IMG/VR virus record: IMGVR_UViG_3300047472_000309
Coordinates: 1-64,000 of that record
DNA: 64,000 bases
Strand: one strand, 5' to 3'
Within the stretch, counting starts at the first letter, position 1, and each line of letters opens with the position of its first letter. Below the pieces are notes generated by a model. That model did no database searches and had not been told where the DNA came from. It worked only from the letters and a program-made list of their open reading frames with translations. Shown here piece by piece: positions 5,298 through 8,265 of this stretch. The position numbers and the translations under genes are program-made.

Positions 5298-5942
5298 TTA
5301 CTTCGCCAATTCTGCCTGGCGACGCTGCTTGCGCGGCATCGCTTTGTGCTGCTGGAGCTTCTGGGCGGCGAGCTCCGCGTCCGTGTACTGGACGTTGGTG
5401 GTAACACCAATGTAGGGTCGCTTCAGGGCCACCTTCACTTCGCCGTCGTCTTGACGATACACGGCGATGTTGCCGGTCATGATGCCGTGGTACCATTGGC
5501 CGTCGAAGAGTGCTGCGATTTCCGGCTGATGATCGAACTCGCGCTTCTCGTGACAAATGAGCAAGTACTTGACCAGTCCCCACTCACAGGTACGGGCCGA
5601 CGCCGGTTGCGGCCGGTGCGCCATGAACTGCCAAAAGCGTTGCTGCTTCAAGTAGTTCAGATAGGCTTCTTGCTGTTGCGCCATCTGCATGGCCTGCTCG
5701 ACCTGTTCCGGGGTTTGTTCCGGATTGGCAGCCAGGCCTTCGAGCGTGATCTGTTCCAGTTCGTCGGCGTTCATCACGTCGTCGAGTACCGGCACGCTTT
5801 TACGCGGTTCGGCTTCGGCTTGTTCCCGCATGGCTTGTTCGACCATGAGACCCTCTTGGATCTCAGCCAGTCGCGCAGCTTCTTCTTCCGAGACGGGCAA
5901 CGCAGCCGCGCTCTCTACCTTAACATCCATCATCAGTTCCAC
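5298..5942 (-). CDS. Hypothetical protein, acidic N-half and basic C-tail
   Basis: 214-aa ORF with phage-like codon usage; last gene of an overlapping operon. Confidence 0.75.
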   Translation of the reverse strand: MELMMDVKVESAAALPVSEEEAARLAEIQEGLMVEQAMREQAEAEPRKSVPVLDDVMNADELEQITLEGLAANPEQTPEQVEQAMQMAQQQEAYLNYLKQQRFWQFMAHRPQPASARTCEWGLVKYLLICHEKREFDHQPEIAALFDGQWYHGIMTGNIAVYRQDDGEVKVALKRPYIGVTTNVQYTDAELAAQKLQQHKAMPRKQRRQAELAK

Positions 5943-6418
5943 CGATCGCGTTTTCTGTTCTTGGGCAAGGCGGGCCGCTGGGAGCTTTTCCCAGGGTTAT
6001 TCACCTTGAATGCGGGCATAGCGTGTACAACTTCTGCCAAGCCCAATGGCTCGACGTCACTTCTCATGGGATGCACCATCCCAGTAAGTTTTTCCTGGAT
6101 CTTGCGCTCACTCATGCCGCGACTCTTAAGCTCAACGCGCAATTCTTCGGGTGAAGCAATCACAATCAGGGGCAACTTGGCAGCACGAATCGCCTCAATA
6201 ACGTGGGGTGCATGTAAGGCGTGCTCCACGTAAAGAATCGGCAACTCCCGGAAAGCACCTTTATGCTGGGACGTGAGCTCCATGACAGGGGTGCCATCCG
6301 GTAGCGCCACGGTGAGGGGTTCGATGCTCTGGTCGATCGGCTCCAAATAAGCCTTGGTCGCTTCGCGCAGCTGCTCGATGACCCGCGCGCATTCTTCATC
6401 CCGGTTCATTCCCACCAC
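5933..6418 (-). CDS. Hypothetical protein ending ...RKRDRWN
   Basis: 161-aa ORF overlapping both neighbours; GGGAGG RBS. Confidence 0.7.
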   Translation of the reverse strand: MVGMNRDEECARVIEQLREATKAYLEPIDQSIEPLTVALPDGTPVMELTSQHKGAFRELPILYVEHALHAPHVIEAIRAAKLPLIVIASPEELRVELKSRGMSERKIQEKLTGMVHPMRSDVEPLGLAEVVHAMPAFKVNNPGKSSQRPALPKNRKRDRWN

Positions 6419-6720
6419 CTCCCTTTCTTGTAGCGTGAGCCCGACTTCGGCCCATGCTTACGTTTCTTCTTACCCCGGCGTTCATCGCGTGAACGATAGT
6501 CTTCCATCGGACCCTGATTCATGTTGGTGTATGTCTTGGCTCCGGTGCTCGCGTTCCCGTACAACGCCACGCTACTGGTATCGTTAACTGCTGCCTGAAG
6601 GGCGATCTGAACCGCAGCGCTGCGTAAGAGCGAACGGGCGTAGCCTGTACGGCCACCCGGCAAGATATGGCCGATGGTGCCCACATTCACGTGCGGCTTG
6701 GTGCGCTCAAACTTCGCCAT
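6406..6720 (-). CDS. Small protein with an EF-Tu-identical N-terminal peptide
   Basis: ATG 6720 with GGAGGAG RBS. Starts MAKFERTKPHVNVGTIGH, then unrelated sequence; basic tail ending GRWWE. Confidence 0.8.
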   Translation of the reverse strand: MAKFERTKPHVNVGTIGHILPGGRTGYARSLLRSAAVQIALQAAVNDTSSVALYGNASTGAKTYTNMNQGPMEDYRSRDERRGKKKRKHGPKSGSRYKKGRWWE

Positions 6721-6997
6721 CTTTCTTCTCCTCCGGCGCGCTCGCACAGACTTTACAACACATCCGGCGCTTGTAGCCCAGGAAGTGATGTCGGCAGTGT
6801 AGGCAGATACATTCGTACATGCCGTTTTCGTGCGGGAAGTCTTCCGGCCAGTGGCGTTCTTTACTGTCCGGATGCTTACGATTGAAGCCGGTGATAATCG
6901 CTGCGTCTAGCTTATCGCGCTGGGCTTCCAGCCGCTTGAGAATCGCGGCTTTAGCGATCTCGGCAGGAGTGGGTTGGAGTTGGATCTCGTCGCTCAT
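6707..6997 (-). CDS. Small zinc-ribbon protein
   Basis: Start MSDEIQ in an ATGA overlap; CICLHC...CCKVC cysteine pairs. Confidence 0.75.
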   Translation of the reverse strand: MSDEIQLQPTPAEIAKAAILKRLEAQRDKLDAAIITGFNRKHPDSKERHWPEDFPHENGMYECICLHCRHHFLGYKRRMCCKVCASAPEEKKDGEV

Positions 6998-7218
6998 GCT
7001 GCTTCTCGTTCTTGGTATCGTTCTAGTGTTGCTTCGGCTTCTTCGAGCGCCGCACGCACTTCCGCTAGGCGGTTGGCTGCTTCCTCGACCGTCCAAGCTT
7101 CGCCACCCCGTTGGGCACTGTGCGCTATCCGGCTAAACTGATGCTGGATAGCACGCGCACCCCGCTCTTGTTCTTGTCGCCATGACGGCGCCCATGGTTT
7201 ATTCTGACGCTTGGCCAT
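6994..7218 (-). CDS. Hypothetical coiled-coil protein
   Basis: 74-aa ORF whose stop overlaps the next start (ATGA). Confidence 0.7.
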   Translation of the reverse strand: MAKRQNKPWAPSWRQEQERGARAIQHQFSRIAHSAQRGGEAWTVEEAANRLAEVRAALEEAEATLERYQEREAA

Positions 7219-7224
7219 GCTAGT

Positions 7225-7473
7225 TCACCGGTGATTCCACCACTGACGACTACGTTGGTTCTTGGTTCGCTTGGCTTGTCGCTCACGTTGCGCTTGACGC
7301 TCTTCCGCAGGTGTGAGGGGCGCTGCCATGTAGCTCAGTTCTTCTTCCGAGTACGGGTTGGGGGTGGGCGGACAGATCTGATTGAACACCCGTTGCGCGG
7401 GACTGTGCGACTTCATAGGTGCGGCGTAAGGTGGCGAAGTGACGGGTTTCTTGTAATCGCGTGAATCAAACAT
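7225..7473 (-). CDS. Hypothetical basic protein ending RSRQWWNHR
   Basis: Start MFDSRDY at 7473 with AGGAG RBS; the longer 5' extension in the track overlaps the next gene. Confidence 0.65.
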   Translation of the reverse strand: MFDSRDYKKPVTSPPYAAPMKSHSPAQRVFNQICPPTPNPYSEEELSYMAAPLTPAEERQAQRERQAKRTKNQRSRQWWNHR

Positions 7474-7481
7474 CTCGACTC

Positions 7482-7661
7482 CTAGAAGGCGTACCACATC
7501 AACCAAGCGACGGCGGAGATCAAGCAGCCGATTACCAAGAAGCCAGCCGCGGCAATGCTTTGGAACGGCACCCGCTCCGGCGTCGCCAGACCCAGGGCCG
7601 GTAGCCCCACACAAAACACCGTGATCCAGATCGGCAACCAGTAGGAATGAAAGGAGATCAT
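7482..7661 (-). CDS. Small two-TM membrane protein (59 aa, not in track)
   Basis: MISFHSYWLPIWITVFCVGLPALGLA...AAAGFLVIGCLISAVAWLMWYAF; ATGA overlap with the upstream gene; fills the operon gap. Confidence 0.7.
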   Translation of the reverse strand: MISFHSYWLPIWITVFCVGLPALGLATPERVPFQSIAAAGFLVIGCLISAVAWLMWYAF

Positions 7662-8014
7662 GTCGTGGTCAGAATGTTGGGCAAGGCGAGGAGGATGTTC
7701 TCGAGCGCCTTGGGCACACCTCGGTCACGGGCCGAACCGCGCGACATGACAAACGGAAAGTAGGCTTTGATCTTGTCGACCAATGCCGTATCGGCCACGT
7801 CGCACGTGTAGATGCTGGTATTGGCATCCGGCGTGCCTTGGAACATGTCGATCAAGAGCGCACAGGCGCGCGACATGTAGGGCTCGGCCGCGATGTCCTT
7901 CTCGTCGAAGACTTCCGGATGCTGACGGATAAAGCTGGTCCAACCACGGATAATCCCGACACTGGCGAGAAGGTTATTCGGCTCCACGGTTTCCCGTGTT
8001 TGATCGAAATTCAT
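7658..8014 (-). CDS. Hypothetical protein
   Basis: Start MNFDQ in an ATGA overlap with 8011-8265. Confidence 0.7.
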   Translation of the reverse strand: MNFDQTRETVEPNNLLASVGIIRGWTSFIRQHPEVFDEKDIAAEPYMSRACALLIDMFQGTPDANTSIYTCDVADTALVDKIKAYFPFVMSRGSARDRGVPKALENILLALPNILTTT

Positions 8015-8265
8015 TTGCGTTTTCTCCGACGTTCTTTCTTGGGGGTGTTCCACCACTCGCGCTGACGACTGTATTTAGTCTCGAAGATGTTACTCTTCGG
8101 CACGCCTTCGGTTTCAACACTGATATAGGAACTGTTAGCGAGGACTTCGACGATGGCTTTGGTGACGGTTGCGCTTGGCCCCACGTTCACCAGGAGAATC
8201 TTCTGCTGGCCTGTGATCGCATGACGAATCGCACGCAGGTCCTCATCATCGACGACGGCAGTCAT
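8011..8265 (-). CDS. Hypothetical protein with basic tail RQREWWNTPKKERRRKRK
   Basis: 84-aa ORF with AAGGA RBS; first gene of the operon. Confidence 0.7.
   Translation of the reverse strand: MTAVVDDEDLRAIRHAITGQQKILLVNVGPSATVTKAIVEVLANSSYISVETEGVPKSNIFETKYSRQREWWNTPKKERRRKRK

What the first reader, a model, noticed from the sequence alone, without database searches (positions are those of the whole stretch)
5298..8265. Operon of small proteins sharing a basic tail with an R-x-W(W)-N/E motif
Seen: four otherwise dissimilar proteins in one translationally coupled operon end in KNRKRDRWN, RYKKGRWWE, KNQRSRQWWNHR and SRQREWWNTPKKERRRKRK. A fifth ends PRKQRRQAELAK, and another begins KRQNKPWAPSWR. 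Inference: a shared short linear motif for RNA/ribosome binding, a common partner, or localisation such as the phage nucleus. The operon sits immediately upstream of chimallin and includes the EF-Tu-like protein.
Basis: partly seen in the sequence, partly recalled or inferred. Interest (0 to 1): 0.7.

Follow-up and report, generated by a model that had tools for sequence, protein, structure and literature searches.

The report
Conserved basic tryptophan tails on phage proteins
Several unrelated small proteins encoded next to the nuclear-shell gene of a giant phage end in the same kind of short, positively charged, tryptophan-containing tail; the tails are the best-conserved part of each protein, so they are probably a shared binding or address tag, but what they bind is still unknown.

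Summary
On the minus strand, ten tightly coupled genes (8438→5298) lie just upstream of chimallin (5042→3132) in a complete 310-kb chimallin-encoding jumbo phage whose nearest named relative is Burkholderia phage FLC9. Four proteins end in ..SRQREWWNTPKKERRRKRK, ..KNQRSRQWWNHR, ..YKKGRWWE and ..RPALPKNRKRDRWN. A fifth has a basic tail without Trp, and one has a basic Trp-containing N-terminus. I found a further R-x-W tail (..LRRWVFEGIVE) on the first gene.

This is not chance. Five of the 13 most basic C-termini among about 408 predicted proteins are in this operon. All three C-terminal WW doublets in the genome are here too.

The tails are invariant in every intact homologue, down to 36–55% identity. 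Neighbouring codons carry synonymous changes. The tails are predicted disordered or helical, and they occur on shuffled N-terminal domains. Overlap with the next gene's ribosome-binding site or start codon explains part of two tails (G, H) but not the other two (A, D).

The function is untested. My best guess (about 0.35) is arginine-rich, RNA- or ribosome-binding peptides. Docking on a protein hub, membrane anchoring and degrons remain open. The "EF-Tu-like" protein carries only EF-Tu's first 18 residues.

The parts
8262..8438 (-). First gene of the operon (58 aa, pI 11.9).
   Evidence: N-terminus MFGVNVVKR and C-terminal LR.W[AV]FE are conserved in 11 relatives.
8011..8265 (-). Gene A (84 aa). 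The tail SRQREWWNTPKKERRRKRK lies at 8014-8070, with WW at 8050-8055.
   Evidence: RQREWWNTP.K.RRRK is invariant in 16 homologues down to 53% identity. Codon columns: 8 synonymous-only against 2 amino-acid-changing. AF2 predicts helix 60-73, a kink at P75 and helix 76-83.
7658..8014 (-). Gene B (118 aa, acidic, pI 4.8). It has no basic tail.
7482..7661 (-). Gene C (59 aa), a small hydrophobic protein, probably with two membrane-spanning segments.
   Evidence: Sequence. Conserved in relatives, though at a different position in FLC9.
7225..7473 (-). Gene D (82 aa). The tail KNQRSRQWWNHR lies at 7228-7263.
   Evidence: QNQR.R.WWNHR is kept in 7 loci, including the divergent L023. The gene is absent from some relatives.
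6994..7218 (-). Gene E (74 aa). The basic N-terminus MAKRQNKPWAPSWR lies at 7177-7218.
   Evidence: MAKRQ[NT]K.W.PS is conserved.
6707..6997 (-). Gene F (96 aa), a CxxC...CxxC zinc-ribbon-like protein.
   Evidence: phrog_8931 and phrog_10481, both of unknown function. Fused to a GNAT in L022 and to a G-type tail in L023.
6406..6720 (-). Gene G (104 aa). The N-terminal 18 residues (6667-6720) are identical in kind to the EF-Tu N-terminus. The basic region with tail ..RRGKKKRKHGPKSGSRYKKGRWWE lies at 6409-6480.
   Evidence: EF-Tu models matched only at positions 4-39. Both ends are conserved and the middle is variable. The codons GGG AGG TGG TGG GAA TGA also carry the Shine-Dalgarno sequence and start codon of H.
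5933..6418 (-). Gene H (158-161 aa). The tail RPALPKNRKRDRWN lies at 5936-5977.
   Evidence: NRKRDRW is kept in 21 of 22 homologues down to 36% identity. The exception looks frameshifted. AF2 gives pLDDT below 50 for residues 113-146.
5298..5942 (-). Gene I (211-214 aa). The body is acidic (net charge -16). The basic tail MPRKQRRQAELAK (5301-5339) has no Trp.
   Evidence: The tail stays basic in divergent relatives but its sequence varies.
5213..5270 (-). Two tandem stem-loops just after the operon's last stop codon, with no T-run.
   Evidence: RNA fold -33.9 kcal/mol, z-score -4.4 against shuffles.
8468..8475 (-). Promoter-like CTATATTA(G), 37 nt upstream of the first gene.
   Evidence: It matches the phiKZ/201phi2-1 predicted promoter core TATATTAC (PMC7058600). 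It is present only in the window and its closest relative, so the assignment is weak.
3132..5042 (-). Chimallin (636 aa), with its own promoter-like CCTATATTAC at 5129-5137. It ends ..GWGRTGFSSRW.

Best explanation
The tails are genuine short linear peptide modules kept by selection on the protein. They are attached to otherwise unrelated small accessory proteins of one operon. That operon is a lineage-specific insertion between the phiKZ-gp052-like gene and chimallin.

I think the most likely mechanism is that they are arginine-rich-motif-type nucleic-acid-binding peptides. Lys/Arg would contact phosphates and the one or two tryptophans would stack on bases. The tails would tether different effector domains to one RNA-containing target, most plausibly the host ribosome or phage transcripts, during host takeover.

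Shown here: the tails exist, they cluster in this operon, they are conserved, selection acts at the protein level, they are predicted disordered or helical, and they are modular. Inferred only: the ligand and the timing.
For: Clustering is far beyond chance.

The tails are the most conserved part of each family: H, A, D and G.

There are synonymous changes without amino-acid change in the tail codons (A 8 against 2, H 5 against 3, D 4 against 2).

A's WW is not dual-coded. In L022 the downstream gene's frame has a stop between the WW codons and the start. D's WW lies 17-22 nt or more from the next start.

H's conserved tail is predicted disordered. A's tail is predicted helical with a proline kink.

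The tails are modular. H homologues carry three different N-terminal halves. L023 joins F's zinc ribbon to a G-type tail without the EF-Tu piece.

The R/Q/N/E/W composition (for example RERQAKRTKNQRSRQWWNHR) resembles arginine-rich motifs such as lambda N and HIV Rev, which use a Trp. This comparison is from my own knowledge.

There is a precedent in a chimallivirus. The early phiKZ protein 014 clamps 5S rRNA with R10, K15, W18 and R23 of a terminal helix, and nine early phiKZ proteins co-sediment with ribosomes (PMC10914614).

G also carries the EF-Tu N-terminus, a link to translation.
Against: No RNA or ribosome binding was or could be tested here.

No repeated RNA hairpin target was identified, and Rfam finds nothing in the region.

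There is no homology to the ribosome-rescue factor ArfA.

Basic tails are generic, and acidic proteins or membranes are equally plausible ligands.

The tails of G and H overlap the ribosome-binding site and start of the next gene, so part of their conservation is at the nucleotide level.

An early-class promoter for the operon is not conserved among relatives, so 'early host takeover' is an assumption.
Confidence: 0.35

Rival explanations
1. The tails dock on a common protein hub. Candidates are the chimallin shell (mimicking chimallin's own C-terminal segment, which here ends ..SRW), the nuclear import machinery, or a host protein. In that case the motif is an address or recruitment tag.
For: The operon sits next to chimallin. 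In this clade and in RSF1 chimallin ends in R-W (..FSSRW..GSRW(G)..NDNRW). The last 10 residues (CTS2) of 201phi2-1 chimallin dock on a neighbouring protomer (PMC9365700). A conserved disordered terminal peptide is the classic form of a docking motif.
Against: The complex prediction of the chimallin core with H's tail gave no answer, because chimallin did not fold. Chimallin's tail is Gly-rich and only weakly basic, unlike these tails. In phiKZ and Goslar, import cargo is recognised through folded surfaces and not a terminal signal (PMC12908238). A similar TerL terminus (..GSRW) is not conserved in FLC9.
Confidence: 0.25
2. The tails hold together a multi-subunit complex made by the operon itself. 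Basic tails would bind the acidic subunits B (pI 4.8) and I (body net charge -16).
For: Tight translational coupling of all ten genes is typical of stoichiometric complexes. Body and tail charges are complementary. Gene fusions between operon members (F-GNAT and F-G in relatives) suggest that they work together.
Against: This was not tested. Gene content varies among relatives (D, C and the GNAT are present or absent), which is unusual for an obligate complex. I itself carries a basic tail.
Confidence: 0.1
3. The Arg/Lys plus Trp tails are interfacial membrane anchors, as in C-terminal membrane-targeting sequences. They would place the proteins on the inner membrane or on the early infection vesicle.
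For: The operon encodes one small hydrophobic protein (C), and relatives have a second (89-91 aa). Arg/Trp-rich peptides partition into anionic membranes (my own knowledge). Chimalliviruses start infection in a membrane vesicle (PMC12908238).
Against: Each tail has only one or two hydrophobic residues. There is no amphipathic pattern. I's tail has no aromatic residue.
Confidence: 0.12
4. The tails are degradation or timing signals: basic C-terminal protease tags of the MuA/ClpX type.
For: Basic C-terminal ClpX tags exist (my own knowledge). Several proteins needing the same turnover control would share a tag.
Against: There is no sequence resemblance beyond the basic charge. The invariant Trp and the 14-19-residue length of the conserved blocks are not explained. 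This was not tested.
Confidence: 0.06
5. The motif is a by-product of nucleotide-level constraints, namely the ribosome-binding sites and start codons of the overlapping downstream genes, together with compositional chance.
For: G's GGG AGG TGG TGG GAA TGA contains GGAGG and the GTG/ATG start of H in every locus. H's CGG TGG AAy TrA TG abuts I's start. AAC AGA AAA in H's tail never varies. A's CGG AGA is B's Shine-Dalgarno sequence.
Against: The WW of A lies 36 nt, and that of D 17-22 nt or more, from the next start. A's flanking codons vary synonymously while the peptide stays fixed. The conserved blocks span 12-24 residues, far more than a ribosome-binding site needs. The statistics argue against chance.
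Confidence: 0.05

Closest known systems
Arginine-rich motif (ARM) RNA-binding peptides (lambda/P22 N proteins, HIV-1 Rev and Tat)
   Same: These are 10-20-residue terminal peptides rich in R/K/Q/N/E. They often contain one functionally important Trp, are disordered alone and helical when bound, and can be transferred between proteins. (The comparison is from my own knowledge. Helix prediction for A is.)
   Different: Here the peptides are at C-termini in five of the six cases, contain a WW doublet followed by N or E, and occur on several proteins of one operon. No cognate RNA hairpin is known, and binding is untested.
phiKZ014 and the other early ribosome-associated proteins of phiKZ (PMC10914614)
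   Same: It is an early small protein of unknown ancestry in a chimallin-encoding phage. Its terminal helix uses R/K plus a Trp (R10, K15, W18, R23) to grip rRNA.
   Different: There is no sequence similarity to phiKZ014 or any other phiKZ-like phage protein: tblastn of G and H finds phage relatives only in FLC9. phiKZ014 uses its N-terminal helix within a folded 3-domain protein. It is not a motif shared by several proteins.
Basic C-terminal tails of ribosome-rescue factors (ArfA, ArfB, SmpB) that occupy the empty mRNA channel
   Same: They are short Lys/Arg-rich C-terminal tails, some with a key Trp, on small proteins. G's ..KHGPKSGSRYKKGRWWE has a similar flavour (from my own knowledge).
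   Different: The ArfA Pfam model finds nothing in the whole phage genome at E<=10. There is no evidence of rescue activity.
Chimallin C-terminal segment 2 (CTS2), the lattice-docking tail
   Same: It is a C-terminal peptide ending in an aromatic residue preceded by Arg (..SRW in this clade). It docks on a neighbouring protomer in 201phi2-1 (PMC9365700).
   Different: CTS2 is Gly/Ser-rich and not polybasic. No docking of the operon tails could be modelled.
EF-Tu (for protein G only)
   Same: Residues 2-18 (AKFERTKPHVNVGTIGH) match the EF-Tu N-terminus and first beta-strand. Relatives with MVKGKFERTKPH.. are closer still to the betaproteobacterial form.
   Different: The P-loop is degenerate (GHILPGGRT instead of GHVDHGKT). 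Only positions 4-39 of about 396 are matched, at about 26 bits against cut-offs of 450-520. There are no GTPase domains.

Membership tests
Short linear motif / portable terminal peptide module (generic class) | The motif is conserved while the flanking sequence diverges. | tested here: met
   Tails are invariant at 36-55% overall identity.
Short linear motif / portable terminal peptide module (generic class) | It lies in an intrinsically disordered or independently folding segment. | tested here: met
   H residues 113-146 have pLDDT below 50. A's tail forms separate helices with pTM 0.31. Both models are of low to moderate confidence.
Short linear motif / portable terminal peptide module (generic class) | It occurs on unrelated domains (modularity). 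| tested here: met
   Four dissimilar proteins carry it. H's N-terminal halves are swapped. There is an F-G-tail fusion in L023.
Arginine-rich motif RNA-binding peptides | An Arg-rich stretch of 10-20 residues with helical propensity. | tested here: met
   Composition. Helix predicted for A's tail.
Arginine-rich motif RNA-binding peptides | Specific binding to an RNA element. | not testable with these tools
   No cognate hairpin was identified. Rfam finds nothing.
ArfA ribosome-rescue factor (PF03889) | A match to the family profile. | tested here: not met
   No match in the genome at E<=10, and none in the Pfam scan of G at E<=1.
EF-Tu / translational GTPase (protein G) | An intact G domain with the P-loop GHVDHGKT, plus domains II and III. 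| tested here: not met
   Only model positions 4-39 are matched, at about 26 bits against cut-offs of 450-520. The P-loop is replaced.
Chimallin CTS2-like lattice-docking tail | The peptide docks in the groove of a chimallin protomer. | tested here: inconclusive
   The complex prediction gave no answer, and the chimallin chain folded at pLDDT 30.
Terminal import signal for the phage nucleus | A terminal peptide is sufficient to direct a reporter into or onto the nucleus. | not testable with these tools
   No such signal is known in phiKZ or Goslar (PMC12908238). This clade is unstudied.
Translation-signal overlap artefact | The motif codons coincide with the downstream Shine-Dalgarno sequence or start, and conservation is at the nucleotide level, not the peptide level. 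| tested here: not met
   It is met in part for G and H but not for A and D.

The most novel reading that the evidence does not exclude
The basic R-x-W(W)-N/E tail is a portable address tag. It would send several unrelated accessory proteins of this Burkholderia-type chimallivirus lineage to one phage-built structure, such as the nuclear shell, its import site or the early infection vesicle. That would be the first linear targeting signal described for a nucleus-forming phage, where cargo selection is currently thought to depend on folded surfaces only.
Probability: 0.15. Interest if true: 0.85.

Novelty: new variant of a known kind. Interest (0 to 1): 0.55.

Why it matters
Most genes of nucleus-forming jumbo phages have unknown function. 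How their proteins find the ribosome, the early vesicle or the nuclear shell is an open question.

A 10-20-residue tail shared by several unrelated proteins, and conserved more strictly than anything else in them, is a direct experimental handle. One peptide and one WW-to-AA mutant could identify a common partner or destination for a whole operon.

FLC9 is cultured on Burkholderia glumae and carries the same tails, so the test is practical.

If the tails prove to be generic RNA-binding tails, the result is modest: new examples of a familiar device. If they prove to be a targeting signal, it changes the current picture of cargo selection in these phages.

Tried and rejected
1. Complex prediction of the chimallin core (45-586) with H's tail (108-158). 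Result: 'no answer', score 0.00, and chimallin folded at pLDDT 30 without an alignment. This is evidence neither for nor against binding.

2. Pfam, PHROG and NCBIfam scans of all operon proteins. They gave no informative family apart from the EF-Tu N-terminal fragment in G and PHROGs of unknown function for F and G.

3. ESM Atlas look-alikes for G and H: nothing usable.

4. ArfA model against the genome: nothing.

5. Rfam on 4900-8700: nothing.

6. AF2 of H gave only pLDDT 57, so I did not run a fold search on it.

7. The idea that TerL shares chimallin's ..SRW terminus as a docking tag. FLC9's TerL ends ..NRPWR and RP12 and RSL2 differ, so I treat the match as coincidence or at best a loose pattern.

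8. The idea that WW provides an upstream GTG start for the next gene in all four cases. This is true for G-to-H and possible for H-to-I. It is excluded for A-to-B by an in-frame stop in L022, and excluded for D.

9. Assigning the operon to the early promoter class. The TATATTA match is present only in the window and its nearest relative, so I do not rely on it.

10. A tunnel-arrest or termination-pausing role for the nascent tails. I rejected this because the W-to-stop distance differs in each protein (2, 3, 5 and 13 residues).

11. My own ORF caller missed several of these small genes because their codon-usage scores are low. I added them by hand, so the proteome-wide counts are approximate.
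Full report
**What is there**

The window is the first 64 kb of a 310,654-bp virus record with direct terminal repeats, estimated complete, at 56% G+C. It encodes chimallin at 3132-5042 on the minus strand. Orthologues match Pfam PF25677, and the protein matches solved chimallin/PhuN structures.

The only named close relative is Burkholderia phage FLC9, with 80% chimallin identity. The next chimallins (RSF1, RSL2, RTH11, PhiPA3) are about 30% identical.

Upstream of chimallin, on the same strand, lie ten small genes from 8438 down to 5298. 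I call them 'first', A, B, C, D, E, F, G, H and I. Their nine junctions are five ATGA overlaps, one 14-nt overlap, one 1-nt overlap and two spacers of 6 and 8 nt.

In RSF1, RTH11 and PhiPA3 the gene order is DNA polymerase, a divergent phiKZ-gp052-like gene, chimallin, then RNA polymerase beta, and this operon is absent. PhiPA3 has one unrelated gene (052) upstream of chimallin. The operon is thus an insertion specific to this lineage. tblastn of G and H against 50,697 phage records finds phage relatives only in FLC9.

**The observation**

- A ends SRQREWWNTPKKERRRKRK.
- D ends KNQRSRQWWNHR.
- G ends RYKKGRWWE, after RRGKKKRKHGPKSGS.
- H ends RPALPKNRKRDRWN.
- I ends MPRKQRRQAELAK.
- E begins MAKRQNKPWAPSWR.

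In A, D, G and H the tail tryptophans are the only tryptophans in the protein.

**Chance**

I used a rough gene set of about 408 ORFs that I called myself. Several of the operon genes had to be added by hand because their codon-usage scores are low.
- Thirteen proteins have at least 7 K/R in the last 20 residues, and five of them are in this operon (Fisher p = 3e-6).
- The pattern [RK].?WW?[NE] in the last 16 residues occurs in 4 of 10 operon proteins and in 5 of 398 others (p = 2e-5). The pattern was chosen after seeing the data.
- The genome has 23 WW doublets, about the 19 expected. Only three lie within 14 residues of a C-terminus, and all three are here.

**Conservation**

A search of 5.8 billion proteins found 16 homologues of H. 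A profile search of 1.84 billion representatives added six more and nothing beyond this family.

Overall identity falls to 36-45%, and the N-terminal half is replaced outright in several members. Even so, every intact protein ends ..RP[AS]L[PT][KRQ]NRKRDRW[NT]. The single exception, P0036, reads as a one-base frameshift inside the tail.

Sixteen homologues of A, down to 53% identity, keep RQREWWNTP[KR]K[ED]RRRK unchanged.

In 14 syntenic loci from metagenomes and FLC9, the other tails are also kept:
- D's ..QNQR.R.WWNHR
- G's ..YK..(.)WW[EK]
- E's N-terminus
- the first gene's LR.W[AV]FE

I's tail stays basic but varies in sequence and never has Trp.

**Peptide or nucleotide constraint?**

This was the main rival I tested, because these gene ends overlap the next gene's translation signals.
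- **G:** the rival is partly right. GGG AGG TGG TGG GAA TGA contains a GGAGG Shine-Dalgarno sequence. In every locus the TGGTGG also overlaps H's start: GTG GGA.. in most loci, and ATG GTG GAA in L023.
- **H:** CGG TGG AAy TrA TG abuts I's start, and AAC AGA AAA never varies.
- **A:** the WW lies 36 nt from B's ATG. In L022 the B frame has a stop between the two, so there is no hidden upstream start.
- **D:** the WW lies 17-22 nt or more from the next start.
- **Codon columns in the tails:** A shows 8 synonymous-only columns against 2 amino-acid-changing. H shows 5 against 3. D shows 4 against 2.

The conserved blocks span 12-24 residues, far more than a ribosome-binding site needs. I conclude that selection acts on the peptides, with an added nucleotide constraint in G and H.

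**Structure and modularity**

AlphaFold2 on the H alignment gives a weak model (pLDDT 57). The conserved last 45 residues are at pLDDT below 50, which means predicted disordered.

For A the model has pLDDT 70. The tail forms a helix (60-73), a kink at Pro75 and a second helix (76-83).

The tails occur on different bodies.
- H homologues carry three kinds of N-terminal region.
- In L023 a single protein joins F's zinc ribbon, an H-like segment and a G-type tail, and lacks the EF-Tu-like N-terminus.
- In L022, F is fused to a GNAT acetyltransferase.

Strict conservation, disorder or an autonomous helix, and modularity together define a short linear motif or portable peptide module.

**What it does**

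Nothing here measures function, so this part is inference.

I favour nucleic-acid binding, probably RNA or the ribosome, at about 0.35. The composition (R, K, Q, N, E and one or two W) is that of arginine-rich motifs such as lambda N and HIV Rev, where a Trp stacks on the RNA. That comparison is from my own knowledge.

There is a direct precedent in a chimallivirus. The early phiKZ protein 014 clamps 5S rRNA with R10, K15, W18 and R23 of a terminal helix, and nine early phiKZ proteins co-sediment with ribosomes (PMC10914614). G adds a link to translation through its EF-Tu N-terminus.

Against this reading, no RNA target was found, and there is no homology to ArfA-type tails.

The rivals are:
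- Docking on a protein hub, including the chimallin shell, whose own tail ends ..SRW in this clade (0.25).
- Assembly of an operon-encoded complex through the acidic B and I proteins (0.10).
- Membrane or early-vesicle anchoring, given the small hydrophobic proteins in the operon (0.12).
- A degron (0.06).
- A pure translation-signal by-product (0.05).

The one complex prediction available to me, the chimallin core with H's tail, returned no answer because chimallin did not fold. It counts neither way.

A recent review states that nuclear cargo in phiKZ and Goslar is selected through folded surfaces, not through a terminal signal (PMC12908238). This lowers the prior for a nuclear-import tag. 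It also makes such a tag notable if it were found in this distant lineage.

**Timing**

A CTATATTA(G) element lies 37 nt upstream of the first gene. It resembles the phiKZ/201phi2-1 predicted promoter core TATATTAC (PMC7058600) and ten other sites in this genome, including the site upstream of chimallin. In relatives, however, the site upstream of the operon is not conserved as TATATTA. I therefore do not claim an early class for the operon. Chimallin's promoter and its 5' UTR are conserved.

**The 'EF-Tu-like' protein**

G shares residues 2-18 (AKFERTKPHVNVGTIGH) with EF-Tu. NCBIfam EF-Tu models match only positions 4-39, at about 26 bits against cut-offs of 450-520. The P-loop is degenerate. 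The N-terminal peptide is nevertheless conserved in all orthologues except the L023 fusion, so it is probably functional. G is an EF-Tu N-terminal fragment or mimic, not an EF-Tu.

**Verdict**

The 'shared linear motif' reading is supported. Its ligand is unknown.

I rate it a new variant of a known kind, namely basic, Trp-containing terminal peptide modules, with interest 0.55. It is directly testable in FLC9 on Burkholderia glumae.

Noticed in passing
window 6667-6720 (-), N-terminus of gene G: The first 18 residues (MAKFERTKPHVNVGTIGH) copy the EF-Tu N-terminus and first beta-strand, but the P-loop that follows is degenerate. The peptide is conserved in all G orthologues. Some relatives begin MVKGKFERTKPH, the betaproteobacterial EF-Tu form. 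It may be a decoy or mimic of the EF-Tu N-terminus.
   Followed up: partly
L008:5271-5735, L014:1316-1795, L022:5065-5730, L023:5486-6016: Some relatives carry a GNAT acetyltransferase gene between F and G. All its specific family matches are below cut-off, and rimI and AAC models are among the weak hits. In L022 the GNAT is fused to F's zinc ribbon. In L023, F is fused to a G-type tail. These fusions suggest that F, the GNAT and G work together.
   Followed up: partly
window 5213-5270 (-): Two tandem 10- and 12-bp stem-loops with 7-nt loops lie directly after the operon's last stop codon, with no T-run (-33.9 kcal/mol, z -4.4). They may be a terminator, a processing site or a stabiliser for the phage RNA polymerases.
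   Followed up: partly
window 5129-5137 and ten other sites genome-wide (e.g. 19081, 44335; G000 134725, 159966, 174200, 231408, 282124, 306311): A promoter-like motif ..TTT....(A/C)CCTATATTAC occurs 11 times, almost always on the minus strand upstream of genes. It matches the published phiKZ/201phi2-1 promoter core TATATTAC.
   Followed up: partly
window 5043-5128 (-), chimallin 5' UTR; also L001, L009, L011-L013, L022-L024: The chimallin leader is strongly conserved across the clade. It includes the palindrome CACACTCGAGTGTG and GAAACAAGGAATAGCACTATG.
   Followed up: no
window 27906-30083 (+), large terminase: TerL ends ..AAGSRW, the same last residues as chimallin (..FSSRW here, ..GSRW in FLC9). 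FLC9's TerL ends ..NRPWR and other relatives differ, so this is probably coincidence.
   Followed up: yes
window 7216-7227 (-), D/E junction: D and E are in the same reading frame, separated only by TGA and two codons (cgg TGA act agc ATG). The same arrangement occurs in L009 and L013. Readthrough would join D's basic WW tail to E's basic W-containing N-terminus.
   Followed up: no
P0036 (metagenomic H homologue): This is the only H homologue without the tail. It reads ..RPARHYPKTENVIGG.., which is the tail's DNA shifted by one base. It is either a frameshift or an assembly error.
   Followed up: partly
window 3132-3164 (-), chimallin C-terminus; L016 (RSF1), L023, L025: Chimallin ends in Arg-Trp in this clade (..SRW, or ..RWG in divergent members) and in Ralstonia phage RSF1 (..NDNRW). 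It does not in RTH11 (..PFLR) or PhiPA3 (..SGFY). This is the segment equivalent to the lattice-docking CTS2 of 201phi2-1.
   Followed up: partly
window 5298-8438 versus L016, L017, L018: The whole small-gene operon is a lineage-specific insertion between the phiKZ-gp052-like divergent gene (8485-9621, phrog_3938) and chimallin. Its gene content varies among relatives: D, C, a second membrane protein and the GNAT come and go.
   Followed up: yes
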